The notes below the pieces were generated by a model. The model was not told the origin of the DNA. It did not search any database and saw nothing but the letters and a program-made list of their open reading frames with translations. Positions 111-32,238 of a stretch of 64,000 nucleotides of DNA are shown one piece after another (position 1 is the first letter of the stretch; every line of letters starts with the position of its first letter). The stretch is from Mantamonas sphyraenae STR306 (taxonomy: Eukaryota; Protista; CRuMs): the NCBI GenBank assembly GCA_026936335.1, contig JAPMXV010000050.1, positions 124,001-188,000 on the forward strand, in the 5' to 3' direction. Position numbers and translations under genes: made by a program.

Positions 111-3100
111 ATGCAAACCGCAACGTTGCTGCAACTTGTGGTTGTGCTGCTTGCGTGCAGCGTCGTGATGACGACGGCTGTGCCTGCAGCCAGTGTGTCG
201 TCCACGGCTGTGGGCGCCACGCAAACACTGAAGCAAGGCATGGTCGCGAATGGCTCGCCGTCGGGAGCGACGGAAAGCGAAGCGGCCGCGGCCGATGTCG
301 GCCTTGTGGATGTGCAAGACAACGAGCTGGACGAGCTCAACCAGGCCGCATCCGACCTGTCTGCACAGTCCAAGTTCTACCAGGACGACGAGCGCGACGA
401 CCCATTTGCCTCGGACTTGTCTGGTGAGTGTGTGTGGGCAACGCGGCGGGCGGCAAACGCGGGCGCCGGCGAGAGGGGATTTGGCGTGGTGATTTGCAAC
501 GGACCGTACGGCTGACACACATGGGCACAGACTTTGACGAGTACGAGGAAGAGGTGTCCGACCCGACGACCGAACAGGCCGAGGCTGCGCTGACATCTGC
601 CGAGCCAGACAGCTCCATGGAGGTAAGCCTTTTCTTGAGGAAACTGCGCGTTTCCACCGTGCCCCTTTTTTTTCCGAGCGCCAAACGGCATTGTGCACGC
701 AGCTTGCGGCGGGTACGCTTGTAGCAGCGACGCATGGACAGGAGCAATGTGTGCACACTGGATGTGTGCAGCGTGTGTGCAGGTCGTGCCGGCGTGCAAG
801 TGAACGTGGGATGCGGCAGGGCGGAAGGGAAAGGCCAGCGGATGGCATCTGTTTTTTTTTCGCCAGCCCCAAATTTCAAGAGTCTTGTTTTCTGCTGTCG
901 AGGCAATCGAAGCTGACACGGGAAAACGCAGGACGTGGACACGAGCGACGAAGAGGTGGAGGACGAGGCCGCGCGCAAGTTGCGCGACGAGTACCGCCAT
1001 TGTGACAGCAAGGGCAACCACCGAGCGTGTGTGTGTCTGCGCAAGATTCACACGCCCGTGCCTCGACCCGGAAAGCCCGCAAAGCCCCAGTGGGTGCTTG
1101 CGAGCAAGTATGCCAAGCGCGTGGTCAAGCGCACGGCCAGGAGCCAGAAGAAGCGTGCCAAGCGCGCTGTGAAGCGTCGTGTCAAGTAGGTTTTGCGGAT
1201 GGAGAATGCGGCGAGGAAGGAGATGGCAAGCAGGCACTCACACACACTCTCTCTCCCTCTGGTGTCTGTGCAGGAAAATGACGCTGCTGACAGCCGAGAT
1301 CAAGACTGTGCAGAAGACGCGTAAGTTGAGGCAGAAGAATTGTGCTCGTGGGGACTGCTGAAGAAGATGGAAGATGCACAGACACTCACACGACGAGGGA
1401 TGACGACGTGTCACAGTCAAGGTGTGGAAGAACAAGAGCAACCAGTACGGACGCACGCTGCGTCTGCAGCGTAGTCAGCGACGTGCGTCGCGCAAGATCT
1501 ACCAGAGACTGCGCAAGGACCGCAAGCACGCCAAGCTGGCGCGTGCTGAGCTGGGTCGCTTCCGTGCACTCACGCGAGCAATCAAGACGTCGCGTGCGCG
1601 ATATGTAAACGCACGTCGCCGCCTGCGTGCGCTGCGCCAGCGCGTGTCGCTGTACCGCCGCGCAAGCCGCTTTGGATGCAAGGTGCCCACGTCGGCAACC
1701 AAGGCCAAGGGAGCACGCCGTGCAGCGCTGTTGAAGCGCTTTGCACGCAAGTGCAAGCTTGTGATGCGACGCAAGAAGCGACGTGCGCGCCGACGCCTGC
1801 GCAGCCTGGCTCGAAAGCAGGTTGCGCGCTGCCGGCGCAGCCGAGCGTCGTGCCGACGCCACCGCGCGCTTGTGCGCAAGTACAGCCGCGCAGCGAGTGC
1901 GCAGCGCCGTGTGGCGCGCAAGTGGGGCCGCAAGAAGCAGTACAAGCGAGCTGCGGTGCATACGCGCCGTGCGGCCGCGCTGACGAAGCGCTTGAAGGGA
2001 GCACGCAGCCTGTTGCGCTCGTGCCGCTCTGTGATGACGCGTTGCCGACGCCGCGTGCGCCTCGCCAAGCGTGCACGCCGTGCACGCTGTGTGATCAACC
2101 GACGCGCGCGACGCAACCGCAAGAGTCTGCGCCGCGCACTTGCTGTGTGCCGCCGCAAGCGTGTGGTGCGTCGCCGACGCCGTGCAAAGGCCCTGCGCCG
2201 CCGCTTTGTGCAGCTGCGCCGCCGTAGTGCGCGCCAGGCTCGCCGTCTGCGCCGCCTGGCAAAGAAGGCGAGCAAGAGCCTGCGTGCAGTTGCACAGCGT
2301 GCTCGCGTGGCTGTGCTTCGCCGCAAGCAGCGATTGGCAGCCAAGGCTCGCCGCCTGGGCTGCAAGTACGTGCGCGTGCCTGCCATTTCCGCACGCATGC
2401 GCTCGTGGAAGCTGTTTTACCGCCGCTGCCGCCGCAAGGCGCTGGCTGTGCGTCGCCGACGCCGCAAGGCTCTGCGCCGACGTGCACGCCGTGTGCCGAA
2501 AAAGGTGCGCCGTTTCGTGCGCGCCGTGCTGCGACGCAAGTGCTTCGGCGTCAACGCACGCATGCCCGGCGCCAAGGCGTCTGTGGCAGCGTGGCGCAAG
2601 TACTGGGTCAAGTGCCGCGCCAGCAAGAAGCGCCGTGTGCAACGACGCACGCGCAACGTGCGCCGTCGCTTCCGTGCGATCAGCAAAAAGACAAAGGCAG
2701 CCATGCGTGCGTGGAAGGGCGCGAGCGCATTCTGCCGCGGCCAACTGGCTGCGATGGAGAAGAAGACGGCGGCCATGGACAAGAAGGGCCAGTTTACGGC
2801 TGCGCTGGCGTACCAGAAGGCTGCGCTGACCAAGCTGCAGGCCAACAAGAAGTGTGCCAACATCCTGGCTGTGCGCCAGCGCAACCGCGACGCACAGAAG
2901 CTGGCTGCCCTTGTGACCAAGAGCATCCGCCTGGGCTGCCGCCGTGGTGCGCCGCACAAGGCGTGGAGCCCGTCCAAGTGGGCGGCCTACCTGCGCAAGT
3001 GCAAGGCTCGTCGCTACCTCAAGACACTGCGCAGCACATACGCACGCACGATGCGCACTGTGCGCAACCTGCGCCGTCGTAAGCGCTACACCGCGAGCGT

Positions 3101-6100
3101 CAAGGTCACTCTGCGATCCCTGCGCCGCCGCGCACACTCGCTGCGTGCCAAGATTGCACGTGTGCTGCGACGCAACGTGCGCCGTCTGCGCCTCAAGCAG
3201 AAGCGTGTGCGTCGTCGCCTGCTCGGCCGCCGCCATGTGCGTCGCCGTCGCCGTGCCCTGCGCCGTGTCAAGCGACGCATCCGCGCCGCAGCGCGCAAGG
3301 CACGCGCTCTGCAGCGCAGCCGCCGCCGTTCGCGTGCGCAGGCGTTTGCACGCCGTGTGAAGCGATGCCGCCGTGGCCTGCGTGTGTCCAAGCGCAGCCT
3401 GGTGGTGCTGAAGCGCCGCCTGCGCAAGCTTCGCCGTCGCCCTGCACGTGTCCAGCGCCTTGTGGCACGCAAGCTCAAGATTGTGCGCCGCCGTGTGCGT
3501 AAGTACGCCTCGTGTGTGCGCCGTACGGTGCGCGTTCAGCGCATCACGCGTCGCCGTGCGCGCCGCGTCAACGCCAAGCGCCGTGCCAGCCGCCGACGTG
3601 TGTTGGCTCGCCGTGCACGCCGCCTGCAGCGCAAGCGTGCGCGTTTGGCACGCCGTGCGCGTGGCCGCAAGGTGACGCGTGCTGCCAAGCGTGTGGTACG
3701 CCGCCGCCTGCGTCGTGTGGGCCGTGCGGCACGCCGCATCGAGGCGCGTCTGCGTGCCTCGCGCCGCCGTGAGCGCAAGACACTGCACAAGCGTGTGGTG
3801 CACTGGCGCAAGCGCATGCGTGCAGCTGCACGTGCGCGCCGCCAGTGTGTGCGCCGTTTCCGTCGCCATCGTGCCAAGCGCACGCGCTGCCTGCGTGCCA
3901 AGGCGGCCACGGTCAAGCGCATGCGTGCACGCTACGCCGCCGCACGCCGTGCGCTGCGCATCAAGGCAAAGAAGCACTCTGCGGTGCGCTTTGTGCGACG
4001 CAGCGTGCGTTTTGAGCGCCGTTTGCTGCGCAAGCGTGCGCGCGCACGACGTGCGCTGGCCAAGGCCAAGCGTGCCAAGAAGGCAAAGAAGACGAAGAAG
4101 ACGAAGAAGCAGAGCAAGACGGCAGCCAAGCGTGTGAAGCAGGCGCGTGCCACAGTGCGCGTGCTGACAAAGCGTCTGCGCAAGGTGCGCCGCAACCGCG
4201 ACCTGGTCGAGGTGAAGCTGCGCAACCGCCTGTACCGCATGCTGCGTGCGTTGAACAAGTCGATCGCACGCTGGCGTGTGACGGTGCGCCGCAGCAGCGG
4301 ATACCGCGCACGTGTGTCTGCTGGCTTCCGCCTGGCGCTGCTGTTGCAACAGCGCGTGACCCTGACCGCACGCATTGCGGCCAGCAAGGCACGCACGTAC
4401 CGCCGCCGCCGCGCACGCTACATGGCGCTGGCCAAGGCGACCAAGAGTGCCAAGCGCCGTGTGGCTCTGGCCAAGAAGAGTGCCGCGCTGCGTAAGCAGT
4501 GGGCCAAGTGGCAGGGTGTGTTTTGGCGCCAGTCGACGGCCACACTGCGACGCATGTCGTGGACGCTGAACCAGCTGCGTCGCGAGGCCAAGGTGCTGCA
4601 GCACACGCTGCTGACGCTGAAGACCAAGATGGCCAAGGCAGGCACGAGCAAGCGTGCGCTGTCGGCGATGGGCAAGGAGTACACTGCCCTGCGCCAGCAG
4701 CTGGCCTACAAGCACAAGCAGATCCGCGCCTACGCCAAGGTGGTGGCCAAGCGCAGCCGTGCGCTGGCCGCAAGCAAGCGCCGCACTCTGAAACGCACGC
4801 TGGGCCGCTGGAAGCGCGCCTTTGCACGCCTGCAACGCAAGCAGCGCAAGATGCCGGCCAAGAAGTTTACCGCCCTGCGTGCACGCATGCTTGCGCGTCG
4901 CAAGCGCCTGCTGCGCCGCCGTGCCAAGCGCGTGCGCCGCAGCAAGCGCGTACGCAAGGCTCGCAAGGTGATGCGCCGCGTGCGCAAGGTTGCACGACGC
5001 ACGCGTCGCCGCATCCACAAGGCCCAGCGCAAGCTTGCGCGTGTGCTTCGCCGTCGCCGCGGTCTCAAGATCAGCCGCGCCCGATTCAACTTTCTGCGTG
5101 CGCGATTGGCCAAGCAGCTGATGCGCAAGAGTGCACGCAAGGCCAAGCGCCTGGCACGCCGCACCCACCGTGCGCGTCGCCAGCTGGCCAAACTCGTGCG
5201 TGCACGCGCTCGCGCCAGTGTGCTGCGCCGTGCGCGTCGCTTGTTGCGCACGCGTGCCAAGCGACACGCGCGCGCCGCGGCCCGCCTGCGCAAGCGCTTT
5301 GCTCGCCGTCGTGGCTGGCTCGCACGTGTGCGTCGCCGCCGACGCAAGGGCCGCCGCGTTCAGGATTCGGAGGACGACGCGTTTATCCGCAAGCGCTTTG
5401 CGCTGCTGCGTCGCCTGCGTGCACGCCTGCGCAAGGCGAAGCGCGTGCGCCGCGTGCTGCTGAAGAAGCGCAAGACGCGACGTGCGCGACGTGTCCTGCG
5501 ACGCACGCGCCGTCGCAAGCGTGTGTTGGCGCGTGCGCAGCGCAAGCGCCTGCACCGCGTGGTGTCGTGCCGCTCGACGGGCGATCCGCACTACACCGCA
5601 TTTTCGGGCAAGCACTTCAACGTGTACGGCAAGCAGGGTGCGTTTACCCTGTTTAAGCTGGGCGACGTGCAGGTGGACACGACGCTCAAGTATGGAGCCA
5701 AGTGGGGCGTGCGAGGCCTCAACTCGCAGGTGACGGTGCGCACGGGCGGCCGCGCCACAACGTACGACGAGAACGGACGCTCTCGTGGCGGCGCACGCTC
5801 GATGCAGCTGCGCACACGCCGCGGACGCGGATCGGTGGCGTACTGGCTGCGCACACGTGCGGGCCAGCGCGTGCACGTGCGCCTGCAGTACGTGCGCGTG
5901 GCGTCGCGGTCCAAGAAGCACACGCGAGGCTACTACAACGTGTACGTGCGCACCGAGGCACGCTACGCGGCCAAGGCCACTGGGGTGTGCAACAAGCGCC
6001 ACGGCGCCATCTCGGCCCACGCACGCCGCTGGATTGTGCTGGCCACACGCATGCTGCGCAAGCTGTCGGCCACGCGCCGCAAGCGTGTGCGCCGCCGTTG

Positions 6101-9100
6101 CCGCGCGCGCACCAACGTGGCCTTTTACAACTGCGTGCGCGACTCGTGCCAGAAGCTGGCGTCTGTGGCCAAGCGTGCCAAGCGTGCACGCAAACTTCGT
6201 CGCCGTCGCACGCGTGCGCGCGCCGCACGCCTGCTGCGCATGGTGGCCCACATGCCGGACCGTGTGAGCATCCAGAAGCGCTGCCAGCAGCGCTACGCCT
6301 TCCTGCCGCTGGCTGCGGTGGGCAACAAGCAGACGGGCCGCAAGCTGGTGTGCCGCTCCACGGGCGATCCGCACTACCGCAGCTTCTACGGCCGCGCCTT
6401 TAACGTGTACGGCAAGCAGGGCGCCATGACACTGTTTGCCTACCGCAACGTGGCGGTGATCACCACGCTCAAGTACGGTGCCAAGTGGGGCAACCGCGGC
6501 CTGAACGCCGGTGTGCAGCTGCGTGTCAACGGACGCACGGTGGCCACGTACAACGACGTCTGCAAGTCGTCGGGCAAGCGTGCGTTCCGCATGAAGGGCA
6601 GGAGTGCCAACGTGACGCTGCGTGCCAACGACGCCTCCACCGTCAACGTCCGCCTCACCTGCCACCGCGTGGGCCGCAAGTCGGCCAAGCACACGCGTGG
6701 CTACTACAACGTGTACGTGTACGCGCGCGAGCTGAGCGTGCACACCGGCCGCGGTCTGTGTGCCAGCGGACGCGGCCGCTCCGTCAACGCCGCCCACTGG
6801 AAGCGTGCCACCAAGGCCCTGATGGCCAAGGTGACCGCGCCCATCCGCGCACGCATTGCCCGCTTCTGCAAGCGCTCGGCCTTCAAGACGGCCGTGCACT
6901 TTTACGACTGTGCCTACGACGTCACGCGAGGCCTGGCCAAGCAGACGCGCAAGCACATCCTGAAGCGTCGCAGCCGACGTGCCCAGCGCACAAAGGCCGC
7001 ACGCCGCTTCATCGCCCTCGTGCGCAACGTGACGGCGCGCAACCGCATCCACCGCCGCTGCCGCCGCTACAAGTGGGGCACCCTGCGCAAGCTCGCCTGC
7101 ATCCGCAAGCACGTCCGCGCCTGGCGCTCCCGCCGCGTCAAGAAGCGCAAGACCAACAAGAGGAAGACCAAAAAGCGTGCCCGCCGCAGCGGTGTCCGAC
7201 GTGCCCTCAAGAAGATGCTGCGTCGCCGTCGTCGTCGCAAGGCACGCAAGGCACGCAAGCTCAAGAAGCGTGTGCGTCGTCGTCGCCGTCGTCGTCGTCG
7301 TCGTGTCATCCGCCGCAAGGTGCGCCGTGTCAAGAAGCGTGTGCGTCGTCGCAATGCGCGTCGCCGCGTCTGGCGTGCCTTCAGGCGTCGCCGTCGTCGT
7401 CGTCTTAACCGTCGTCGTCGTCGCCGCCGCCGTCGCGGACGCGTGCAAGACTCGGACTCGGAGTCGCACCTGCGCGGCAAGCGCATCCACGTGGGTCGCA
7501 AGCAGGCCGGGCGTGAGCTGTCGTGCCACGCCACAGGCGACCCGCACTACCGCAGCTTCTACGGCCGCCGCTTTGACATCTACGGCAAGCAGGGCCGCCT
7601 GACTGTGTTCCAGTACCGCAACGTGAAGCTGGTCACCGTGCTCAAGTACGGCAGGCACTGGCGCAACCGTGGTCTCAACTCGCAGGTCGAGCTGACCGTG
7701 AGCGGACGCCGCGTGGGCACGTACAACGACCTGTGCCGCTACGGCGGCAAGGCTGCCTACCGCCTGCGTGGACGCAACGCCCACTTTTGGGTCACGGCCA
7801 ACAATGGCCAGCGCATCCGCGTGCGCATGAACTGCCGCCGTGTCAGCGGCGGCGGACGCCACACACGCGGCTACTACAACGTGTACGTGTACGCACGCGA
7901 GCTGGCGGCCCACGCGGCCGGCGGCGTCTGTGTCAGCGGACGCGGCAAGCAGGCCAACGGACGCGTGTGGATCCAGCGCATCAACGCAATCCTGCGCAAG
8001 ATGAACAAGGCCCAGCGCCGACACGCCGTGCGCATCTGCCGCAAGCAGCGCGTGCAGGTCCATCGCTACAACTGCATCTACGATGTGGCCCGCGGCCTGG
8101 ACCGTGCCGCCGCCAAGCACATTGCTGCGCGACGTGCACGCGAACGCAAGCTGCGCGCCGCCGCCGCTCGCGTGCTGGCCACCATTCGCAACCGCCGCCT
8201 GCGCGCACGCACACGCGCACACTGCCACAAGCGCTACGGCAAGCACGCACAGCGCTACCTGTGGTGTGTGCGCAAGCAGACGCGCAAGGCCATCCACACC
8301 GAACACCGCAGCCAGCTGTCCCGCCGCGTCACGTGCCACGCCACAGGCGACCCGCACTACCGCAGCTTTGCCGGGCGTCGCTTTGACATCTACGGCAAGC
8401 GAGGCAACATGGTGCTGTTCAAGTACGGCCCCGTGCAGCTCAGCACCACCGTCAACTTTGCCAAGCGCTGGCGCAACCGCGGCCTGCAGACAGGCGTCCA
8501 GCTGCGCCTCGGCGGCAAGCAGGTGGCCAGCTACGACACCAACGGACGCTACCGCGGACGCAAGGCCTACAAGATGGTGCGTCGCGGCAAGCGTGGCAAG
8601 GTGGCGTACACCCTCAAGGCACGCGGCCGTTCCATCCGCGTGCGCATCCACTACACCTACCTCGGCTACGGCGGCCTGCGCGGCTACTACAACGTGTACG
8701 TGGACACCCGCCAGTACGTGGCCGTCGCCGCCACGGGCATCTGTGCACGCGGCACGGGCCACCTGGCAAACAGCCCCTACTGGCGCACCATGGCCGCCGC
8801 CATCCTCAAGAAGCACAGCAAGGCCACGCGCGCTCGCTTTGCACGCGTCTGTGCACGCGTGCGCAGCAACGCCTCGCGCTACTACAACTGCGTGTACGAC
8901 GCCCACCAGGGCTTCCTGCGCGCAGCACGCGCACACGCCGCACGCCTGCGTGCACAGCGCAAGCGCTACCTGGCCGCCGCCCAGAAGCTGATTGTGCGTC
9001 TGCCCAAGCGCTCCCTGCGCGTGCGCACACAAACCTACTGTGCCAAGCGATACGCACGCCGCCACCACAAGAGCGTCGTCCACGCACGCCGCTACTACAC

Positions 9101-9998
9101 CTGCGTGCGCAAGCACTGGTCCAACTGGCAGCAGAAGCGCCGCCTGCTCATGGCTCGCCGCCGCTCCGTCGTCGGCTACACCAACTGTGTCGTCAAGGCC
9201 GTGCGTGCCTACCTGCGCCACAAGGCCACCGCCATCAAGCTGCACCAGCGTCGCGTGTGCACACGTGTGTACACCGGTCTCCGCGCACAGTGGCACGCCA
9301 AGTGGAGCAAGGCCCACAGCAACCACGCCCTGCTCCTCCACCACATCACACCGTGGATCCACAGTGCACGCGTGCGCCTCAACCGCCTCTGCATCGGCTT
9401 CCCGCGCCGACGACGCCACTACCTCAACGTCGTCGCCCGCTGGCGCCGCGCCTACCTGCGCATGGTTCGCCGCCGACGCATCCGCCACTACGCAACCTAC
9501 CGCCCCGTGGCCATCTGCCAGCGCCACGCACACATCCAGTACAAGAACCTGCGCACCTACGAGGAGATGAAGACCCTGCTCACGGGCAAGCACGCCCTCA
9601 GCACACGCTGCGGCGTCACCCACAAGTACGTCAAGTTTGCCTTCCGTGCCTCCAGGTACATCTGGAACCAGGTCGCCCTCAGCGAGCGCCACCTCAAGTG
9701 CTCCGCTTGCTTCAAGACACGCCCCCGCGGACCCAAGCGCTGGGGCTGCCTCGTCACCCTCTCCCGTGGCCTGCCCAAGACCTGCAAGACCACGGGCTAC
9801 CTCCTCAGGTACGCAAACTACGCCTACAACCGCCTCAGGCACTTCTTCAAGAACAACGCCGCCGCCATCGAACGCGACGCAGGCTACCGCACGCGCAAGC
9901 TCTTTAAGCGCGCCGTGCACAGGCTCAAGTACATGCGAGCCAGCTTCAAGCGCCTCCTTGTTGCCCAGAGCTGCAAGGCATGCGGAAGCAAGAAGTGA
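111..9998 (+). CDS. Giant secreted Arg/Lys-rich protein with acidic pro-region and four VWD-like (GDPH) domains, ~3095 aa; exons 111-423, 531-622, 932-1185, 1274-1320, 1417-9998
   Basis: Four GT-AG introns (donors gtgagt, gtaagc, gtaggt, gtaagt; all acceptors cag) join the exons in frame to 9288 nt. N-terminal hydrophobic signal MQTATLLQLVVVLLACSVVMTTA. Strong codon bias (AAG, CGC/CGT). Four C-x3-GDPHY repeats. Confidence 0.85.
5560..8905 (+). repeat. Four internal VWD-like domain repeats (~5560-6145, 6345-6925, 7515-8090, 8325-8905)
   Basis: Each has C-x2-TGDPHY-x2-F-x-G-x2-F-x2-YGK-x-G, then W-x2-RGL, RGYYNVYV, G[VLI]C and Y[ND]C-x2-D. Confidence 0.85.
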
Positions 9999-10335
9999 GC
10001 GCCGCACAGCTCGCCCACGGTCTTCTCCGCGTAGCGCACTCGTGTCTTTCGGTTTTTTGGCACGTGTGTCTGTCTGCACAGAGTCGACTGTGGCCAGTGC
10101 CTGTAGTGGCCCCGTCTGCCGCGTCGCCATCGATGGTTCGATGGTGCGGGGCGGATATTCGGAACCTCGCGACAACCCCTCGCCACGCTTGGCGCAAAAG
10201 CCAAGTGCGCGCACAGGATTCGCGAGCACACGCAGCGAGATGGAGCGTGTGCACAGTTGGGTGGGTGTGAGAGAGATTGCAAATGCAAATGCACAAGCAC
10301 GACTTGAACATCATTCTTCCTTCATTCCCCATTCC

Positions 10336-14481: not shown

Positions 14482-16389
14482 TCACCACAACGTCCATCCA
14501 TCCACCACAGTGCCTGTGCGATCCAAGGCAGCGCCACATTGCTCATAATCGGGCACGTTTCCAGCTTCAGCCGAATGGAATTCCAACGCCCCGAGCTCGT
14601 ACAGACTCACATGCGGCGCATTGCCTCCGTCATACATTCCCACCTTGTGTGTGCATGCACTGAGACGGGTCTCATCGTCGACAAGAGCCTCCAGCTCCTC
14701 CCAATCGCTCTGAAAGTAGGTGAGCACCCCTGGCACCGATGTCATGGGTGCATCACACACAGCCACAGAGGCATCCTTGTTGCGCAGTTCGTCGTTGAAA
14801 CAGGTGCCGTCCTGCCACACCATCAGCACATCCTGTCCATAGCCATCCATGGATGGGGCGTTGCCCGCGGCCACAGGCACTGCTCGTCCAGAGGCAAGGG
14901 TGCCCACGTGGATGACAGCTCCCGGCGCAGAAAAGGCAATTGCCACGTGGCTTCCATTGTCAGCCAGGGTCAATGGCGACGCCACCTGGGCCGTGATGGC
15001 CACACAGGACCACGTGGGTGGTGGTGCATCTCCTCCCACACCCACACCCACATCCACACCCACACCCACACTCCCCTCATGTCGCCATGCCACAAACACA
15101 CACCCGGGCTTGGAGGCCATGGTGGTGGCCATGGCACGTGCGGACAGGGAAAACTGTGCGCAGGTTTCTCCCTGCGGACAAAACGTGCCGTTGTTGAGGA
15201 TGTTGGTCGCATTGGCCACCATCCATCGTCCCGTGTCGTCGCTCAACACAAACCCACTGGCTTGCGTGTCCAATTGCACCGACGTGAGTGTGTTCCAACC
15301 ATCCACCACCGCGGGCATGGCCATCAATCTCCCATCCAGCGGTTCCGTGATCCCCGACGCTTCCGCGCCACCCGCATACATGCGACCCTTGTCATCCTGT
15401 GCATACAGCGTCACAAACAACCCATCCCCATCCAGCGTCAGTTGCGTGTGCGGTATCACCCGTGCGTACGAGGCGTTGAAGAGCAATTCGTTGCGTGCAC
15501 GAGAGAACCCGCGCGCAGGAGACACAAACACCTCGAATTGCAATGGGTCGATGTTGATGGCCATCAACATGCCCCGTGGATTGGTGATGTTGGCCTTCAG
15601 ATACGCGTTGGCAATGCTCAACACGTCTTGCTGTGCGCTGGGTTCCCAGCATTGGAAACGATGGTCCATCGACCCAAACTTGGCATAGTGTTTGTCTGCA
15701 AACATGGCAATCAGCAATCCGGCGTCAAACGGCACTGCCGGTTCGTTCAACACTTGCATGCGTGCGTACACGCCGTCGTTGCTGGTCGCTGGTGCCAAAC
15801 CGTCCCCCTGACTGTTGTATGTGCCTACCAGCGGTTGCCACTTGTTGGCCAGGCACGAACGTGTGCTGTTGTTCGGCACCGCCGCTCCATCCAGCGTCAC
15901 CGTGACTTTGGTGCCCGTGGCAAGCAACCCGGTGACAAACGCATCAAACTGCTCCAGCCACAACGCCGCCTCGGCACTTCCGTCGCATGGATGGCCCTTG
16001 AACGCATATTTGGCACACAGTGCCAGGTCGATGCGCTCCTGTTGGAAGGCAGGCATCGTCGACACGAGGTCAATGAGCTGCTCCGACGAGTTGTACACGC
16101 GCAGGGGCTCCGGGGTGTTGTGGTTCAGCACGATGCACCCGTCGCCATGCTTGCTCGGATCCCACCAGGGTTGGCTCGCACAGAACGACGCATCCATCAC
16201 CGTCGGGTCAATCTTCAAGTAACGTGCCCCTTTGGCGTTGATGGCCACATCCCACTCTCGCAGGTCGTTCCAACTATGGATCTGGAACCCCAGCGTGTCG
16301 CGGATGTCATCAACACCATCTACTGGGCGGCTACACGCAACCACCAGCACAAGCAGCAGTGCAAGGAAGGCTGCTTGTCTATTCTTCAT
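14482..16389 (-). CDS. Secreted protein, probable PLC-like phosphodiesterase (TIM-barrel) N-terminal domain
   Basis: Signal peptide MKNRQAAFLALLLVLVVACS. FQIHSWND ... GARYLKID ... VLNHN resembles the two-His PI-PLC/GDPD-like active-site pattern. The function is inferred. Confidence 0.6.
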   Translation of the reverse strand: MKNRQAAFLALLLVLVVACSRPVDGVDDIRDTLGFQIHSWNDLREWDVAINAKGARYLKIDPTVMDASFCASQPWWDPSKHGDGCIVLNHNTPEPLRVYNSSEQLIDLVSTMPAFQQERIDLALCAKYAFKGHPCDGSAEAALWLEQFDAFVTGLLATGTKVTVTLDGAAVPNNSTRSCLANKWQPLVGTYNSQGDGLAPATSNDGVYARMQVLNEPAVPFDAGLLIAMFADKHYAKFGSMDHRFQCWEPSAQQDVLSIANAYLKANITNPRGMLMAINIDPLQFEVFVSPARGFSRARNELLFNASYARVIPHTQLTLDGDGLFVTLYAQDDKGRMYAGGAEASGITEPLDGRLMAMPAVVDGWNTLTSVQLDTQASGFVLSDDTGRWMVANATNILNNGTFCPQGETCAQFSLSARAMATTMASKPGCVFVAWRHEGSVGVGVDVGVGVGGDAPPPTWSCVAITAQVASPLTLADNGSHVAIAFSAPGAVIHVGTLASGRAVPVAAGNAPSMDGYGQDVLMVWQDGTCFNDELRNKDASVAVCDAPMTSVPGVLTYFQSDWEELEALVDDETRLSACTHKVGMYDGGNAPHVSLYELGALEFHSAEAGNVPDYEQCGAALDRTGTVVDGWTLW

Positions 16390-19207
16390 TGCTGAGATGC
16401 TCTGGCTCATCCTGGGCGGCGACCAGGTCTCCTGCCTCCAACACCAACCCTCCCACTCTTGCTCTCCTCTTGCCATCCATGCCGTTGATGACTTGCCACA
16501 ATGTGTTGACCGCTGCTGTGCGCAACTCGTCGGTGGGCATTCCTTTGATTTGGCCCACCACAGTGTGCCACACGTCCTGCACACGCTCCTCCGGCACGCT
16601 GCCCAGCATGGCCATGGTACACAGCATGCCTGTGGCCCCTCGTTCCTCCACGGCACCCAACAGTGCATCCACGGCCTCGTGCTGGCAGGCTGCCGCATCG
16701 TGCAACAACGCCGCAGCGTCCGTCATGCTCACGTCATCCAACAAACGTGCAACGACACGCGTGCACGTCTCACCCCCATCTGCCATGCCACGCAGCAGCT
16801 GCGACTGCATCACAGCACGCCAAACGCCAACCACACGAGGCACACGCATCGCGTTGACACTTTCAATCAGAGGGAGAAGCCTCGACATCACAGCGTCTTG
16901 CACTGTGTGCACCGCCTCTGTAGGCCATTGCCACACATGCACTCGCTTGAGGGCACTTGACAGGGCGTGCAAGTGTGCATCGATGCGTTCGGCGGTGGCT
17001 TCTGCCTCGTCACCAGCGTCGGGAACCCTGGTCAACAGATCCATCACAGTCAGCATCACGCCATGCTGACCCTGCTCATCACACAGGGCGTGTACGGCAG
17101 TACGGACGCCCGAGGACCCACGCGTGCCTGCCATTCGCCTAGCGTAGGCCATGGCAAGCAGAATGCGAAGGCACTGCCGACGCTGCTGGCTCGAACAAAC
17201 GTCCTGCACGATGTTGACCAGGTGACACGTGACCACCACACCCAATTGCCACCACAGACTGCGGTGTGCACTTGCCATCGCGCGTGTGGCCTCGGCCTTG
17301 CTCCGATGTGCCTCAAAGTGCACCTCCGCCAGCAGTTCCAACGAGTCCAACACGTGTCCACGTGCCTCCTCATCCACAGGTTCAGCAGCAAACGCTGCAG
17401 CCAGAGCACGGGTCATTGCATACACCTGCTTGACGAGGGGATGACTCACCGTGCGCGCCACATGTGTGTGCCACTCCTTCTCGTCCTCGCTCAGCTGCAC
17501 CTCCCACAGCCACGTCATATCGCACACATCCATCAGCAGACAATCGCGCAACACGCACATCAACGCAGGCCTGTCACTCGTGTGCACGCAGCCTATGCAT
17601 TGGCCCAGGGCCAATCCCAGGCTCAAGCGCATGCTCGCGTCCCCTGTACACTCCACCCACTCTACCAATGCCTGCATATGGCCCGCAAACAGGCCGTAGA
17701 TGTCCATGCTTGCGTACCTGCGCATCACGTCAGAGTTGCCGTCCCACAGCGCACGCACGTGGTCCACATCCGCCAGGTCGCTCAGGTGCGATGCACCCAC
17801 CTCCACGGGATCCTGCAGTTCGCTGTGGATGCCATGCAGCAGACCACTCACCGCATACCATCGTGCATGCCAAAGTCGCGGGGCGTTGTGTGTCTGCTTG
17901 GCTATCCTGGGGGTGTGTTGTGTGTTGTGTGCCACGAGCGTATGCACCCACGGTGCAAGTTGCACCTTGCCGTCCAGCAGTTTGTGGATGTCCGACACGT
18001 ACGCCAGTTGTTGGCCCACGTGTGTGTAAATGTGATGCAGCAGCAGGCCTCGTGTGTGCATCTGTGTATCCGTGGGTGATGTGTGCTCCTCCAACACCTG
18101 CAGCAAGGCCGTGTGTACCTCCAGACCCAGCTGAGTATGCGCCTCCCCTTCCACTCCGCTCAGGAACAATCCACTGCCGGCGCACGCGTACTGCAGACTT
18201 GCCTCGTGCAGCGTCGCCGCGCGCCCCAACTGCGTGCACAGCAGCTCACACGCAGCCCATTTCTCATGCACCAGGCCACTCACCGCACCTGCACACAGCA
18301 CACTGTGCGACACCATCAGCACCGTGGCCGCGGGGCATCGACTCAGCGCGAGCAGGGTTTCGAGCAAACCGGGTCCGTGAACAGCCCACGACTCAACCCA
18401 CGCGGTTGCGTCGTCGGTCCCATCCTCCTCCCCATCGCCTTTGTCCCACGCCGCTGCCTCGCAGTCCACATGGCTGCACATGCCCACCGCTTCGCTGGCC
18501 TGCATACGTCGCGCGTACACCGCGGCGCTTGTCAGGATTTTCAAGGCGTCCACAAGAGCGGTGAGCGATGTCCGCTTCAAACCGGCCTCTTCCAACGCCT
18601 CGAGAAACGTGTGGCCCTTCCCTCGCACCCTCACCCTGTACAATTGGTCTGTGTACACCTGCACCGCCTGCACCGCCGTGGCCACCACCGACACAGGTAA
18701 CACCGAGCCACGCTGCAGCGCAAGTTCGCGGAGGAACAGCACACGCAGCTCCTCGCTGTGCCACACTGCCGTCTGCAGCTGCCTGGCACAATGGGCCACG
18801 CTGTACACCCCGGCCGCACCGTACATGTCCCTGCGTCGTTCCACACACGCCAGCACATGGGCCTCTTGCCACGCCACAGCCACTTCGTCCTCTGCGTCTT
18901 CCACCACCAGGGTCGACTGCAGTGCCTCTTTGTCCTGCACGCTGTCCAGCGCACGTGTCACCTCCTCCTCTCTGTTCACTGCCTCTTTGTCACTCTCTTG
19001 CAGCCATTTCCGCAGACGAGGTGCCCGCAGAGCGAACCTGCCGCCGCCGCCGCCCCCCGCTGCTGCTGCCAGATGCTCGGCCACCACTGCTGCACGTGCT
19101 GCCTCCTTCACCTTGCCCTCGCGTGCCAGCGTGTACGCACGCTGCACCCACCCTCGCACGCTTTGTGTCTCCTCCACCACCTCCTCCTTTTCTTCCTCAT
19201 TGCTCAT
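16379..19207 (-). CDS. Uncharacterised alpha-helical (ARM/HEAT-like) protein, ~942 aa
   Basis: Long intronless ORF with typical codon usage. The start MSNEEEKEE lies head-to-head with HSP60. No family recognised. Confidence 0.7.
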   Translation of the reverse strand: MSNEEEKEEVVEETQSVRGWVQRAYTLAREGKVKEAARAAVVAEHLAAAAGGGGGGRFALRAPRLRKWLQESDKEAVNREEEVTRALDSVQDKEALQSTLVVEDAEDEVAVAWQEAHVLACVERRRDMYGAAGVYSVAHCARQLQTAVWHSEELRVLFLRELALQRGSVLPVSVVATAVQAVQVYTDQLYRVRVRGKGHTFLEALEEAGLKRTSLTALVDALKILTSAAVYARRMQASEAVGMCSHVDCEAAAWDKGDGEEDGTDDATAWVESWAVHGPGLLETLLALSRCPAATVLMVSHSVLCAGAVSGLVHEKWAACELLCTQLGRAATLHEASLQYACAGSGLFLSGVEGEAHTQLGLEVHTALLQVLEEHTSPTDTQMHTRGLLLHHIYTHVGQQLAYVSDIHKLLDGKVQLAPWVHTLVAHNTQHTPRIAKQTHNAPRLWHARWYAVSGLLHGIHSELQDPVEVGASHLSDLADVDHVRALWDGNSDVMRRYASMDIYGLFAGHMQALVEWVECTGDASMRLSLGLALGQCIGCVHTSDRPALMCVLRDCLLMDVCDMTWLWEVQLSEDEKEWHTHVARTVSHPLVKQVYAMTRALAAAFAAEPVDEEARGHVLDSLELLAEVHFEAHRSKAEATRAMASAHRSLWWQLGVVVTCHLVNIVQDVCSSQQRRQCLRILLAMAYARRMAGTRGSSGVRTAVHALCDEQGQHGVMLTVMDLLTRVPDAGDEAEATAERIDAHLHALSSALKRVHVWQWPTEAVHTVQDAVMSRLLPLIESVNAMRVPRVVGVWRAVMQSQLLRGMADGGETCTRVVARLLDDVSMTDAAALLHDAAACQHEAVDALLGAVEERGATGMLCTMAMLGSVPEERVQDVWHTVVGQIKGMPTDELRTAAVNTLWQVINGMDGKRRARVGGLVLEAGDLVAAQDEPEHLSNEE

Positions 19208-19275
19208 CTTTGTGGCAAATTGCTGGCAGCTCCAGCGCAGCCACCGAAAACTCAACAACCTCGAAAGACACGTCA

Positions 19276-21510
19276 ATGTTTGCCAGGAACGCAAAGGTAG
19301 GTGCCCTGCATGCTGCGCATCCACATCACCATGGTCTCGTGCCCACCAAACTGCCCTTTGTGTGCACGCGAGTGTGCGCATGGGCTTGGCTTGCGAGGTG
19401 GGGAGGAGCGCGCACATGCTGTGGGAGCTGCGGACGCGGACGGAAAGCGGAAAATCCACCGAAGCAGCTCTGCGCCTCCAACATCCCTTTGGCATGAGGC
19501 CAGACACACACCACAGCGTCGTTGGCATGCCCATGCATTGTGGCCACGCAACCGTGTCACTCACACCGTGTGCAGAAGGGACTCGCTCTGCTGCCCAAGG
19601 CTTCCAACCATGTCAACGTCGCGGCTGCCGCTGCGCTGTCCACCAGCGCCTCTGCCCTCTACCCGGGTAAGGAGATCAAGTTTGGTGTTGACGCACGCTC
19701 CAAGATGCTTGCCGGTGTCGACCAGCTCGCCGACGCCGTCCAGGTTACTCTGGGACCCAAGGTAGGTGCCATTTCATCGAGGGCGGGTTTTAACAACTCC
19801 CGCTCCGATTTTTTTCCGTCCTTGCATTTCTCCGTTCAAACGGGGCCTTTGCTCCGAGGGGTGGGCCACATGGACACTGACATGGAAGGACACCCCACGT
19901 GCGGAAAATGCTCCGTGGACCCATTGTTGTGGATGGTGGGTGGGTGACAACACACACAGGGCCGCAACGTGGTGCTGGAACAGGCGTTTGGCTCGCCGAA
20001 GATCACCAAGGATGGTGTGACGGTGGCCAAGCACGTGGAGTTTGAGGACAAGTACGAAAACCTGGGTGCGCAGCTGGTTAAGGATGTGGCCAGCAAGACC
20101 AACGACGTGGCAGGCGATGGCACGACGACGGCAACGGTGCTGACGCGTGCGATCTACTCGGAGGCATGCAAGGCGGTGGCGGCGGGCATGAACCCGACGG
20201 ACCTGCGACGCGGCATCAACCTGGCCACGACGGCACTTGTGGAACAGCTGCAGAAGGCAAGCACGGCGGTGACCAGCAATGATGCAGTGAAGCAGGTGGC
20301 CACCATTTCGGCCAACGGCGACACGGAGATTGGTGCGCTGATTGCCTCGGGCATGGAGAAGGTGGGCTTCGAGGGAGTCATCACCGTGACGGAGGGCAAG
20401 AGCCTGGAGAACGAACTGGAGCACATTGAGGGCATGAAGTTTGATCGTGGCTTCATCTCAGCCTACTTTGTGACGGACCAGAAGAGCCAGAGTGTGGTGC
20501 TGGAGAACCCGCTGATCCTGCTGGTGGAGAAGAAGGTCAGCAACTTCAAGAGCATCGTCAACGTCGTCGAGGCTGCCGTGGGCATGCAGCGTCCCATCCT
20601 CTTTATTGCCGAGGATGTGGAGAGTGAAGCCCTGGCCTCGCTGGTCATCAACAAGATGCGCGGCATCGCCCAGGTGGCCGCCGTCAAGGCCCCGGGCTTT
20701 GGCGAGAACCGCAAGGCCACCCTGCAGGACATTGCCATCATGACCGGTGGCCGTGTGGTGAGCGAGGAGCTTGGTCTGAAGCTGGAGGATGCCACCCCGG
20801 AGTGGTTGGGTCAGGCCAAGAAGGTGGAAATCACCAAGGACAGCACCCTGATCCTGGACGGCCAAGGCGACAAGGCCGCCCTTGCCGAGCGTTGTGACCT
20901 GATCAAGGAGTCCATCAACAAGACGACGTCGGAGTACGAGAAGGAGAAGCTGCAGGAGCGTCTGGCCAAGCTGCAGGGTGGTGTGGCTGTGCTCAAGGTG
21001 GGTGGGGCCTCCGAGGTGGAGGTGGGTGAGATCAAGGACCGCGTGGTGGATGCACTCAACGCCACACGCGCGGCTGTGGAGGAGGGCATTGTGGCAGGCG
21101 GTGGATCTGCACTGCTGCACGCCTCCAAGGTCCTGGACACTCTCGAGGGCGACAACTTTGACCAGAACATTGGCATCAAGACGGTGCAGAAGGCCGTGCG
21201 CTACCCGACCAAGCAGATTGCCACCAACGCAGGCGAGCAGGGCGACGTGGTCGTGGGCAAGCTCCTCGAAGTGGACGACGTCAACATGGGCTTCAACGCA
21301 GCCGTCAGCGAGTACGTCAACATGGTGGAGAGCGGCATTGTCGACCCCACCAAGGTTGTGCGCACTGCCCTCCTTGACGCTGCCTCTGTTGCTTCCCTGA
21401 TGGCCACCACCGAGGCTGCCATCGTCGACCTCCCGGAGAAGGAGGGTGGCGGAGGCATGGGCGGCATGGGCGGCATGGGTGGAATGGGCGGCATGGGCGG
21501 CATGATGTAA
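19276..21510 (+). CDS. HSP60: Mitochondrial chaperonin 60, 585 aa; exons 19276-19296, 19576-19761, 19960-21510
   Basis: Transit-peptide-like [28 protein letters not shown]|[23 protein letters not shown] and a GGM-repeat tail. Two GT-AG introns keep the frame. Confidence 0.97.
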
Positions 21511-30539: not shown

Positions 30540-32147
30540 ATGACATCGCAATCCTCCGATGCAGACCGGTGGATGCGCATGAGTCCTCGCAATTCGGATG
30601 AAATGACACGCAAATTGCTTCCTGATCACCAGCTTTCGTCGTCTCCGGGGGCGGCAACCTCTACCGCAGCATCAAGCCCTTCTGGACGCTCGGGACTGAA
30701 GAAGGTGACTGCAGACATGCCTTCGTTGCAGGCGGCGGATGGTGACATGGAACCTGCAGACATGCACTCGCACAGGGGCACGAGCAGTACACGCGGGACT
30801 TCGGCGACCTCGTCCGCCACCTCTTCACGCCGTCTCCACCAGCAACGACCGGCGCCAGCACCGATTCAGGGCGAGAGTGGCGTCACTGTGTTGGCCATCC
30901 CGGAGGACATCTCGTTCTCCTCCCTGGTGGATGAGTACTTCAGCGATGAGGAGCATTTGTCGGACGAAGAGGACGAGGATGCACAATCCGCGGGGCACAA
31001 CAGCAGCGGAGCCCTGACGTCGGTGGTGGTGGGCGCCGATAGCGTCGGGTCGTACCGAGACACGGGCAAACTTGCCAGCTACGACCAATTCCCACTTCTG
31101 TTTGCCTTGATGCGCTTCACCCAAGTGTATCACCATCCTTCGTCGTCTCCACTGGCGCCATTGTTCACGGCGTTGTTGCCCGCGACGGTGCTCGTCCTCA
31201 GCTGGGCCCTGGACATGGTCATTCTGCTCTTTTACACCGTAACCTTCTCCGAATGGGTGCTCCACTTTGTGTCCATGGCCACAGTGACCACCTCCTTTGT
31301 CTTTCTGTACATCATCCTCCGCAAACCCGTCCTCCGCGTCCTCCTCACCACCTACCGCAGCCGCCTACGCCGTCGTGCCGCACGCAACGTACGCAACCTC
31401 ATCCTGGCCACTGTCACCACCTCTGTGGTTGGGGTCCTTGCCGATTTGCCCCTCATCCTGAATCTGGTGGAACAACTGCAGGCGGTGGACCACGAGTTGC
31501 ACCTCAACTTCCAACTCATCCTCATTGTCGTCTGCATCGGTGAAATCCTATACTACAGTGTGTTGGTGCTGGCCATTGCCACCGTGTGGTTGGTGGCATT
31601 GGTGCAAGCACGCCAGTGGACCGACTATCGACGTTCCCTCACCGCCGGCAGAATGGATGTCGACCAGGCCACCCTGCGTCACGCACGCCTTCGTGCAACC
31701 ATCAGTGATGTCAACACATCCTTCCAACACTTCCTCTCCGTCATCCTCCTCCTCATCATCATCAGCATCGTCGTCAACACCTACGCCGCACTCCGTGCCG
31801 TGGACAATTCCCGCTTCTTGTTCTTCGTCTCCTCCTTTGCCTTTAACATCTTTGTCATGTTTGCCCTCATGCTGCCCCTGCCCCTGGTCACCTCCAAAAT
31901 CAACAAGGTTCGCAAGACGGTGGCCCGAATCCGAGCCTTTACGCCTGTTGTCCACGCGCAGCAACTCGACTCCTTCCTCATCTACCTCGGGTCCGTAAAC
32001 CCCAGCATCAAACTGGCTGGCATCGATCTCACCCTCTCCTTTGTCACCAAAACCATCCTGGCCGTGTTTTCCATCACCGCCTTTGTCGTTCAGCGTGAAC
32101 TCAGCTCCGCGCCACTCAGCGACAATCCTTCCACCCCAACTCACTGA
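30540..32147 (+). CDS. Gustatory-receptor-like (GRL/7TMIC superfamily) seven-TM protein, 535 aa
   Basis: Long hydrophilic N-terminus with no signal peptide and ~7 hydrophobic helices. The C-terminal LDSFLIYL...IKLAGIDLTLSFVTKTILAVFSITAFVVQ resembles the GR TM7a/7b signature ending in Q. Confidence 0.7.
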   Translation: MTSQSSDADRWMRMSPRNSDEMTRKLLPDHQLSSSPGAATSTAASSPSGRSGLKKVTADMPSLQAADGDMEPADMHSHRGTSSTRGTSATSSATSSRRLHQQRPAPAPIQGESGVTVLAIPEDISFSSLVDEYFSDEEHLSDEEDEDAQSAGHNSSGALTSVVVGADSVGSYRDTGKLASYDQFPLLFALMRFTQVYHHPSSSPLAPLFTALLPATVLVLSWALDMVILLFYTVTFSEWVLHFVSMATVTTSFVFLYIILRKPVLRVLLTTYRSRLRRRAARNVRNLILATVTTSVVGVLADLPLILNLVEQLQAVDHELHLNFQLILIVVCIGEILYYSVLVLAIATVWLVALVQARQWTDYRRSLTAGRMDVDQATLRHARLRATISDVNTSFQHFLSVILLLIIISIVVNTYAALRAVDNSRFLFFVSSFAFNIFVMFALMLPLPLVTSKINKVRKTVARIRAFTPVVHAQQLDSFLIYLGSVNPSIKLAGIDLTLSFVTKTILAVFSITAFVVQRELSSAPLSDNPSTPTH

Positions 32148-32238
32148 GATTGGTGCTGCTGAGCTGAAATGAATGAATGAGTGAATGAATGTGTTCATTG
32201 AATCCCATCTGTTTATCCTCGTTCTTTTCTGCTGGTGA

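What the first reader, a model, noticed from the sequence alone, without database searches (positions are those of the whole stretch)
111..9998. Giant secreted protamine-like polyprotein: signal peptide + acidic pro-region + ~2900 aa polycation with VWD domains
Seen in sequence: splicing four short exons onto the 8.6-kb exon gives one ~3095-aa protein. It has a signal peptide and a ~130-aa Asp/Glu-rich pro-region, then switches abruptly (VEDEAARKLR) to Arg/Lys-saturated sequence. By eye there are only about a dozen acidic residues in the first ~1300 aa of the big exon, Cys is scattered throughout, and Arg runs reach 8-10 residues. Established: such basicity is typical of nuclear protamines, not secreted proteins. 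The layout signal-acidic pro-basic repeats recalls diatom silaffin precursors and cationic antimicrobial precursors, and VWD domains drive mucin/vWF polymer assembly. Inference: an undescribed secreted polycationic scaffold, possibly an extrusome core, prey-capture glue or bactericidal net, cyst wall, or silica/polyphosphate-condensing matrix. I do not recognise this architecture from any known family.
Basis: partly seen in the sequence, partly recalled or inferred. Interest (0 to 1): 0.92.

Follow-up and report, generated by a model that had tools for sequence, protein, structure and literature searches.

The report
Giant cationic VWD glue-like protist protein
A small gliding, bacteria-eating marine flagellate (Mantamonas) encodes a family of huge, very positively charged secreted proteins built around mucin-type, probably self-cleaving domains; they resemble the underwater glue proteins of flatworms and sea stars more than nuclear protamines, but their job is untested.

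Summary
The gene is real: five GT-AG exons give 3,095 aa (Arg 23.7%, Lys 9.4%, net +930) with a signal peptide and an acidic pro-piece. The genome matches Mantamonas sphyraenae by assembly statistics. A M. plastica transcript encodes a colinear orthologue carrying the pro-piece and basic body in one ORF (35% identity, 51 of 59 Cys kept). The four repeats fold as von Willebrand D domains (Z 15 to vWF). Each keeps the GDPH cleavage motif and the tethering Cys pair of FCGBP, lacks the Ca2+ motif, and is followed by a partial C8-like module. The basic body has amphipathic helical periodicity, so it is not protamine-like. At least six paralogues share the signal/acidic/basic/GDPH-VWD plan; the scan's first readers noted several of them on other DNA of this genome. 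Shorter cationic relatives occur in Naegleria, Willaertia and Percolomonas. The closest tested analogue is the flatworm glue protein Mlig-ap1 (secreted, K/R-rich, vWD-C8). Best reading (0.45): a secreted polycationic adhesive or cohesive matrix for substrate and prey. A prey-killing role is the main rival (0.25). The introns were not checked against reads, and no function was tested.

The parts
111..179 (+). Signal peptide (aa 1 to about 23), in exon 1 (111-423)
   Evidence: Hydrophobic core, Kyte-Doolittle 11-mer up to 3.3; four paralogues have equivalent N-termini. SignalP was not available.
180..973 (+). Acidic pro-piece (aa about 24-149, about 35 Asp/Glu) over exons 1, 2 (531-622) and the start of exon 3 (932-1185)
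   Evidence: Composition; colinear match to the acidic N-terminus of M. plastica P0117
974..5555 (+). N-terminal polycationic body (aa 150 to about 1615; exon 3, exon 4 at 1274-1320, exon 5 from 1417); 42% K+R in its exon-5 part, amphipathic helical periodicity, 16 conserved Cys before the first repeat
   Evidence: no second copy of its first 594 exon-5 residues found in the genome
5358..5378 (+). Internal acidic spacer 1 (VQDSEDD after a basic run), candidate processing site
   Evidence: Same [VL]-Q-D-acidic pattern in three paralogues and a V-E-D-D-D-E counterpart in the orthologue
5556..6155 (+). Repeat 1: GDPH mini-VWD plus C8-like helical module (GDPH at 5580, aa 1624)
   Evidence: groups with repeat 1 of the M. 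plastica orthologue (94/96)
6339..6935 (+). Repeat 2 (GDPH at 6363, aa 1885)
7068..7466 (+). Second Arg-rich stretch with runs of up to 10 Arg, ending in acidic spacer 2 (VQDSDSES, 7443-7466)
7512..8105 (+). Repeat 3 (GDPH at 7536, aa 2276), followed by a second helical module to about 8309
   Evidence: AlphaFold2 pLDDT 94.5; vWF and mucin D domains Z 14-15, rmsd 2.5 over about 130 residues; C8 similarity over 22 columns, probability 83%
8322..8921 (+). Repeat 4 (GDPH at 8346, aa 2546)
   Evidence: groups with the last repeat of the orthologue (100/99)
9168..9998 (+). C-terminal Cys-containing all-helical domain with a four-helix bundle; no membrane anchor; shared with two paralogues on the same contig
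   Evidence: pLDDT 85.7; no specific fold match; 47% identity to the orthologue
1389..10310 (-). Antisense shadow ORF (2,974 aa), not considered a gene
   Evidence: Codon-aligned with the sense frame; 0 TTA/CTA/TCA among 348 Leu+Ser codons; no Pfam hit

Best explanation
A secreted polycationic adhesive or cohesive matrix protein of a surface-gliding bacterivore. Steps: (1) the signal peptide takes it into the ER, where disulfides form [sequence, conserved Cys]; (2) each GDPH is cut autocatalytically at Asp-Pro, giving five pieces that stay linked by the disulfide inside each VWD, as in FCGBP [inferred from motif, fold and Cys spacing]; (3) the acidic pro-piece and spacers assist transit and are removed or nicked at [VL]QD or x-Ala/basic borders [inferred]; they cover under 5% of the positive charge, so a separate polyanion is needed for storage [arithmetic]; (4) on release, the Arg/Lys helical arms bind anionic surfaces (sediment, biofilm polysaccharide, bacterial envelopes, the cell's own coat) while the VWD array and helical modules give a scaffold; assembly would be by charge pairing rather than Ca2+, since the Ca2+ motif is lost [inferred]. 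It would work like flatworm Mlig-ap1 but is not a member of that family.
For: Signal peptide and acidic pro-piece in the gene and four paralogues and in M. plastica P0002. No TM segment or anchor in exon 5. 51 of 59 aligned Cys conserved. VWD fold Z 15. Cys five residues before the Asp and a second Cys 135-140 residues later in all four repeats, against C472/D477/C611 in FCGBP. Mlig-ap1, a secreted protein with K/R-rich ends and a vWD-C8-TIL core, is needed for adhesion (RNAi) and blocked by heparin; it has GRK repeats, and two Mantamonas paralogues have GRK runs. vWD-C8-TIL is common in aquatic adhesives. A diatom GDPH-domain protein is localised to raphe and gliding trails. Sea-star footprint proteins have autocatalytic sites of this type. 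Mantamonas glides on surfaces and this strain came from fish skin.
Against: No localisation, expression level or phenotype. No ultrastructure is published for Mantamonas. No sequence link to Mlig-ap1 or to diatom trail proteins was shown beyond the VWD fold. Amphipathic cationic helices fit membrane attack equally well. The pro-piece/basic layout is typical of granule toxins such as proMBP-1. The M. plastica orthologue ORF as called has no signal peptide.
Confidence: 0.45

Rival explanations
1. A prey-killing or prey-processing precursor: after removal of the acidic pro-piece, the basic body is cut at its many basic sites into cationic amphipathic helices that permeabilise bacteria in the food vacuole or on contact, with the VWD array as carrier or agglutinin (works like proMBP-1 or defensin precursors).
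For: Helical amphipathicity z 9.4; about 8.5% of 18-mers have a hydrophobic moment above 0.5; 84 R-x-K/R-R sites in exon 5; the named cationic GDPH-VWD relatives are from phagotrophs (Naegleria, Willaertia, Percolomonas); proMBP-1 precedent; unchecked scan notes report other acid-masked cationic helix proteins in this genome.
Against: Mean hydrophobicity of the basic body is about zero, low for lytic peptides by general knowledge. Conserved Cys along the body point to a disulfide-fixed structure rather than free peptides. Basic sites are expected by chance at 33% K+R. The pro-piece cannot neutralise +930. No pore-forming fold was found.
Confidence: 0.25
2. The structural core of a dense secretory granule or extrusome: several paralogues co-condense with a polyanion into a packed core that expands or is ejected on discharge.
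For: At least seven related precursors with the same pro-piece plan; MBP-1 forms a crystalline granule core after propiece removal; VWD arrays pack into tubules in vWF and mucins (entries). Overlaps with the best explanation if the discharged material is sticky.
Against: No ultrastructure and no report of extrusomes found for Mantamonas. The Ca2+ motif of the animal D domains is missing.
Confidence: 0.15
3. A cyst wall component or a silica/polyphosphate-condensing matrix (silaffin-like).
For: Signal-acidic-basic layout; polycations precipitate silica and polyphosphate in vitro (general knowledge).
Against: Cysts were never observed in culture, yet the orthologue is present in a M. plastica transcriptome. 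I found no report of silica structures. Silaffins are built of short Lys/Ser repeats (own knowledge); this protein has no long tandem repeats outside the VWD units.
Confidence: 0.05
4. An intracellular nucleic-acid-binding, protamine-like protein, with exon 1 mis-joined.
For: Composition; the splice joints were not seen in reads; the orthologue ORF as called lacks the signal peptide.
Against: Canonical splice sites and a continuous frame; the acidic end of exon 1 is in the orthologous transcript ORF; signal peptides in four paralogues and in P0002; VWD fold and conserved Cys pairs.
Confidence: 0.03

Closest known systems
[quoted passage not shown]
   Same: Giant secreted protein of a marine surface dweller; very long K/R-rich regions flanking a vWD-C8 core; GRK runs (in two Mantamonas paralogues).
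   Different: Mlig-ap1 has one vWD-C8-TIL unit, a C-type lectin and 17 EGF modules in a Cys-rich core. The Mantamonas protein has four cationic mini-VWDs, no TIL, EGF or lectin domain, an acidic pro-piece, and a helical, largely non-repetitive basic body. No homology shown beyond VWD.
FCGBP (IgGFc-binding protein; PMC8267560)
   Same: Tandem VWD domains each with CxxxGDPH and the tethering Cys pair; best sequence match among solved structures.
   Different: FCGBP is near neutral and Cys-rich (7-9%) with VWD-C8-TIL units and a GLCGNxNG..DD motif; this protein has 2% Cys, a shortened VWD without that motif, a partial C8, no TIL or FCGBP_N, and net +930.
Gel-forming mucins and von Willebrand factor D assemblies
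   Same: VWD fold (Z 12-15, rmsd about 2.5), several D units in one secreted chain.
   Different: No PTS region, TIL, E module or cystine knot; no Ca2+ motif; polycationic rather than glycan-polyanionic.
Diatom GDPH-domain trail proteins (Ac629; cited in bioRxiv 10.1101/2023.03.06.531300) and sea-star Sfp1/Sfp2 (PMC9382459)
   Same: GDPH-type domain or autocatalytic site in secreted adhesives of surface-moving marine organisms.
   Different: Those are described as PTS-rich/glycosylated or Cys-rich multidomain proteins. I did not align them directly; the link is the motif and one Atlas hit to a diatom VWFD cluster (0.90).
Eosinophil proMBP-1 (PMC11483036)
   Same: Acidic propiece followed by an extracellular fold turned strongly basic; stored in granules.
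   Different: MBP-1 is 117 aa with charge +15 and a propiece of comparable size; here the body is about 2,950 aa and the pro-piece covers under 5% of the charge. Different fold.
Naegleria gruberi XP_002671385 and Willaertia magna KAL9649995 (uncharacterised)
   Same: Signal peptide, one or two GDPH-VWD units with a C8-like helical module, long K/R-rich tail.
   Different: Under 1,000 aa, no acidic pro-piece, Lys-rich rather than Arg-rich; their VWDs branch apart from the Mantamonas repeats. No function known.

Membership tests
VWD domain (PF00094) fold | Pfam VWD match above the curated cut-off | tested here: met
   Whole exon 5: 25.7 bits against cut-off 22.9, from the N-terminal 35 positions of the model; 20 of 60 family members match singly
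VWD domain (PF00094) fold | Beta-sandwich superimposable on vWF/mucin D domains | tested here: met
   Z 15.0, rmsd 2.5, 129 aligned to 8d3c; unrelated rows start at Z 6
GDPH autocleaving VWD proteins (FCGBP type) | CxxxGDPH with a partner Cys near the domain end | tested here: met
   C1620/C1760, C1881/C2017, C2272/C2407, C2542/C2678; D, P, H and the late Cys invariant in 60 sequences
GDPH autocleaving VWD proteins (FCGBP type) | Actual cleavage at Asp-Pro | not testable with these tools
   Needs expression and reducing/non-reducing gels
FCGBP family | FCGBP_N domain and VWD-C8-TIL units | tested here: not met
   No such Pfam hits in exon 1, 3 or 5; C8 similarity only partial
Gel-forming mucins / vWF | VWD-C8-TIL assemblies, PTS domain, cystine knot | tested here: not met
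   Ser+Thr 9.6%, Pro 1.1%; no TIL or cystine-knot hit
Gel-forming mucins / vWF | Ca2+ motif GLCGNxNG..DD at the end of VWD | tested here: not met
   All four repeats lack the acidic ligands; FCGBP control has them
C8 domain (PF08742) | Helical domain with eight conserved Cys | tested here: inconclusive
   Profile match to animal C8 over 22 columns, probability 83%, E 9.5e-6; reversed control negative; only two Cys kept; no Pfam hit
Flatworm ap1 adhesion proteins | C-type lectin, vWD-C8-TIL and EGF core flanked by K/R-rich regions | tested here: not met
   K/R-rich flanks and VWD present; lectin, TIL and EGF absent
Flatworm ap1 adhesion proteins | Found in adhesive footprints and required for attachment | not testable with these tools
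   No localisation data
Protamines | Small nuclear proteins with Arg clusters, no signal peptide, no folded domains (own knowledge) | tested here: not met
   3,095 aa, signal peptide, folded VWD repeats, helical amphipathicity
Silaffins | Short Lys/Ser-rich repeats released from a precursor, in a silicifying cell (own knowledge) | tested here: not met
   No such repeats; modifications not testable

The most novel reading that the evidence does not exclude
Mantamonas has an undescribed polycation-based secretion system: a family of self-cleaving, Ca2+-independent VWD polyproteins that form a charge-assembled extracellular glue or net for gliding and catching bacteria. Together with cationic relatives in Heterolobosea, it would show that tandem GDPH-VWD plus C8-like arrays served as secreted materials in unicellular eukaryotes well before animal mucins.
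Probability: 0.35. Interest if true: 0.85.

Novelty: new variant of a known kind. Interest (0 to 1): 0.7.

Why it matters
Nothing is published on Mantamonas ultrastructure, and I found nothing on the molecules it uses to stick, glide or hold prey. This family gives named candidates and a simple test borrowed from flatworm work (heparin blocks attachment, polycations block release). Lang et al. 2016 (PMC4948705) found VWD in few protists and VWD with C8 first in choanoflagellates; tandem GDPH-VWD units with a C8-like module in CRuMs, the sister group of Amorphea, bear on where mucin-type assemblies came from, though the C8 link is partial. A 200-aa, Ca2+-free, cationic VWD unit is also a small system for studying Asp-Pro autocleavage. 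A secreted chain with net charge near +930 raises the question of how it passes the secretory pathway.

Tried and rejected
RNA check: the look-up of sequencing runs listed no run. The genome paper names an RNA run (SRR21818794), but read laying takes only listed ids, so I did not send it. The spliced model was compared and searched exon by exon; the joined search step was left out, and the exons were joined only inside one script to count residues. Word-indexed homologue searches with repeat alignments found nothing useful; the exhaustive search did. The look-up of encoding contigs had no record for the M. plastica proteins. No relative in prokaryotic genomes by pattern scan; metagenome contigs gave one cationic relative and motif-only hits. 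The C-terminal domain gave only generic four-helix-bundle matches; I do not read the tetraspanin-like or PMEI rows as homology. The weak Gp34_trimer Pfam hit is below cut-off and was ignored. The antisense ORF was rejected as a codon-bias shadow. A PEXEL/RxLR reading of the spacer motif was dropped because the Arg position is not consistent. Loci on C57, C31 and C2 could not be fetched. The original Sfp1 paper was not held. A literature search for secreted polycationic extrusome proteins returned nothing.
Full report
OBSERVATION. Exons at 111-423, 531-622, 932-1185, 1274-1320 and 1417-9998 are separated by four GT-AG introns of 107, 309, 88 and 96 nt and give a single ORF of 3,095 aa: Arg 23.7%, Lys 9.4%, 1,022 basic against 92 acidic residues, net +930, 63 Cys. 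The first 149 residues hold a hydrophobic N-terminus and about 35 Asp/Glu; the switch to basic sequence is at aa 150. There are 12 acidic residues in the first 1,300 aa of exon 5, as stated. An antisense ORF of 2,974 aa covers the same DNA. It is codon-aligned with the sense frame and has no Pfam hit, and the sense frame has no TTA, CTA or TCA among 348 Leu and Ser codons, where five neighbouring genes have 1 to 16 each. I treat it as a shadow.

SPLICING EVIDENCE. No RNA run was listed for this DNA, so no junction was seen in reads. The spliced model was searched exon by exon; the joined search step was left out. Indirect support is good: a M. plastica transcript (EukProt EP00003, TRINITY_DN63_c0_g1) encodes a 3,119-aa ORF in which the end of exon 1, exon 3 and the start of exon 5 match consecutive stretches (0 of 300 shuffles reach each score), exon 2 falls in between with a weak score (28 of 300), and exon 4 has no match. 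From the sequence, joining exon 3 directly to exon 5 shifts the frame, so an exon like exon 4 is needed. The M. plastica ORF starts inside the acidic region without a signal peptide, so the signal peptide of this gene is not confirmed by its orthologue. It is supported by hydropathy, by four paralogues with signal-like N-termini before acidic pro-pieces, and by M. plastica P0002, the counterpart of the C59 paralogue, which has both.

ORGANISM. The assembly has 25,061,354 bases in 78 contigs, the figures published for Mantamonas sphyraenae (25.06 Mb, 78 contigs, GC 59.19%; PMC10492846); the orthologue in M. plastica agrees. This is an identification by statistics and kinship, not by a marker gene. 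Mantamonas is a 4-5 micrometre marine gliding bacterivore of the CRuMs group; cysts were never seen in culture and no ultrastructure is published (PMC12133344). The neighbours in the window are ordinary flagellate genes (CLC channel, Cep192, LRR-ankyrin, dynein heavy chain).

ANATOMY. After the pro-piece comes a basic body of about 1,460 aa (42% K+R in its exon-5 part). Its hydrophobic moment at 100 degrees exceeds local shuffles by z 9.4, with no excess at beta periodicity, so it is built of amphipathic helices; its mean hydrophobicity is about zero. Four repeats of about 200 aa follow (44-52% identical to repeat 3), each starting with CxxTGDPH. An AlphaFold2 model of repeat 3 (pLDDT 94.5) matches vWF, MUC5B and MUC2 D domains at Z 14-15, rmsd 2.5-2.7 over 126-131 residues, far above unrelated rows (Foldseek agrees). 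In each repeat a Cys lies five residues before the Asp of GDPH and another 135-140 residues later, the arrangement of C472, D477 and C611 in FCGBP, where cleavage occurs in the ER and the pieces stay linked by that disulfide (PMC8267560). The GLCGNxNG..DD motif of animal VWDs, the Ca2+ site by established knowledge, is absent from all four. The helical module after each VWD resembles the first half of C8 (22 columns, probability 83%, reversed control negative) and appears to be followed by a diverged duplicate. The last 276 aa form a helical domain (pLDDT 85.7) with only generic bundle matches. There is no transmembrane segment or anchor in exon 5. Two short acidic spacers begin with VQD after basic runs; the same [VL]QD-acidic pattern recurs in three paralogues. 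Exon 5 aligns to the orthologue over its whole length at 34.7% identity, and 51 of 59 aligned Cys are kept, including 16 before the first repeat.

FAMILY. The genome holds at least six more genes with these repeats: C50:71-84 kb, C50:42-52 kb, C6:27-36 kb, C43:31-39 kb, C59:67-70 kb and C60:228-230 kb, with two to ten units each, plus weaker loci on C57 and C31 that I could not fetch. All six are polycationic with acidic pro-pieces or spacers. Two end in a full-size VWD that branches near FCGBP and keeps part of the Ca2+ motif; the first and last repeats of this gene pair with those of the M. plastica orthologue, while middle repeats have been duplicated within and between genes. Two paralogues contain GRK runs. 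Among 1.84 billion representatives only two proteins match strongly along the repeat, both from M. plastica. Weaker full-length matches include shorter secreted cationic proteins from Naegleria gruberi, Willaertia magna, Percolomonas and unnamed sources; the named Naegleria and Willaertia proteins have no acidic pro-piece. No prokaryotic relative was found by pattern scan.

MECHANISM. Shown: the ORF, its composition, the VWD fold, the motifs, an expressed orthologue, the family. Inferred: secretion and disulfide formation; Asp-Pro autocleavage into five linked pieces; removal of the pro-piece; function. Cross-linking through the Asp anhydride is possible but not favoured, since in FCGBP it was found hydrolysed. 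The pro-piece can offset under 5% of the positive charge, so storage needs another polyanion. For function I favour a cohesive or adhesive extracellular matrix (0.45). The closest tested protein is Mlig-ap1 of the flatworm Macrostomum lignano: 5,407 aa, more than 3,600 aa of K/R-rich ends around a lectin-vWD-C8-TIL-EGF core, secreted, required for attachment by RNAi and blocked by heparin (PMC6410801), with GRK repeats (PMC8621496). A diatom GDPH-domain protein is localised to the raphe and gliding trail (bioRxiv 10.1101/2023.03.06.531300), and sea-star footprint proteins carry autocatalytic sites of this type (PMC9382459). These are analogies, and no sequence relationship beyond the VWD fold was shown. 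The main rival is prey killing or processing (0.25), backed by the amphipathic cationic helices and the proMBP-1 precedent (PMC11483036) but weakened by low hydrophobicity and conserved Cys along the body. Cyst wall or silica matrix (0.05) and an intracellular protamine-like role (0.03) are unlikely.

COMPARISON AND NOVELTY. It is a VWD-domain protein of the GDPH type. It is not an FCGBP, a mucin, a flatworm ap1, a protamine or a silaffin, each failing a defining feature tested here. The combination of acidic pro-piece, kilo-residue Arg-rich helical body, tandem Ca2+-free cationic mini-VWDs and a family-specific helical C-terminus was not found in the papers searched. Lang et al. (PMC4948705) reported VWD in few protists and VWD with C8 first in choanoflagellates, so a tandem VWD plus C8-like array in CRuMs is of evolutionary interest, with the caveat that the C8 match is partial. 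Because secreted K/R-rich vWD proteins already exist as tested adhesives, I rate it a new variant of a known kind.

VERDICT. Observation confirmed; interpretation partly supported. Interest 0.70. The scan's first readers noted several paralogues on other DNA of this genome; I had found six of these loci independently and did not use the notes as evidence.

Noticed in passing
G000:C50:86579-119660 (+), upstream of the window, between two family members (L033, L048, L047, L046): A very long acidic, internally repetitive coiled-coil ORF set (open frames of 6,825, 1,500, 1,978 and 781 aa, about 25% Asp+Glu), possibly one gene of more than 10,000 aa with frameshifts; no signal peptide seen.
   Followed up: partly
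G000:C50:81050 and about 83000; G000:C6:27244-36013: The C50:71-84 kb and C6 paralogues change frame two to four times in mid-domain, with no introns evident; these may be long-read assembly indels or decay.
   Followed up: no
G000:C43 paralogue, open frame 30775-38439 (-), aa 566-641: An acidic spacer of about 75 aa, twice introduced by VQD, is inserted inside a VWD domain, splitting it before its last strand.
   Followed up: no
G000:C6:27244-28440 (-): The C-terminal 399-aa frame is 58% K+R with no acidic residue and a long GRK tandem run, like the GRK regions of flatworm ap1.
   Followed up: partly
G000:C50:82405-82914 and C43:31216-31989: Two paralogues carry a terminal full-size VWD that branches next to animal FCGBP repeats (96/88) rather than with the mini-VWDs.
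   Followed up: partly
   Followed up: no
window 1184-1189: Reading into intron 3 meets an immediate TAG, so retention of that intron would give a product of about 220 aa with pro-piece and a short basic tail.
   Followed up: no
P0058 (Naegleria XP_002671385), P0080 (Willaertia KAL9649995), P0014/P0118 (Percolomonas), P0020, P0053: An uncharacterised set of secreted cationic GDPH-VWD proteins with K/R-rich tails in heterolobosean and unnamed protists.
   Followed up: partly
window 10339-63106 (-): Neighbouring genes: CLC channel with CBS domains, Cep192-like, LRR-ankyrin and dynein heavy chain; two long ORFs at 14485-16722 and 16382-19612 have no Pfam hit.
   Followed up: no
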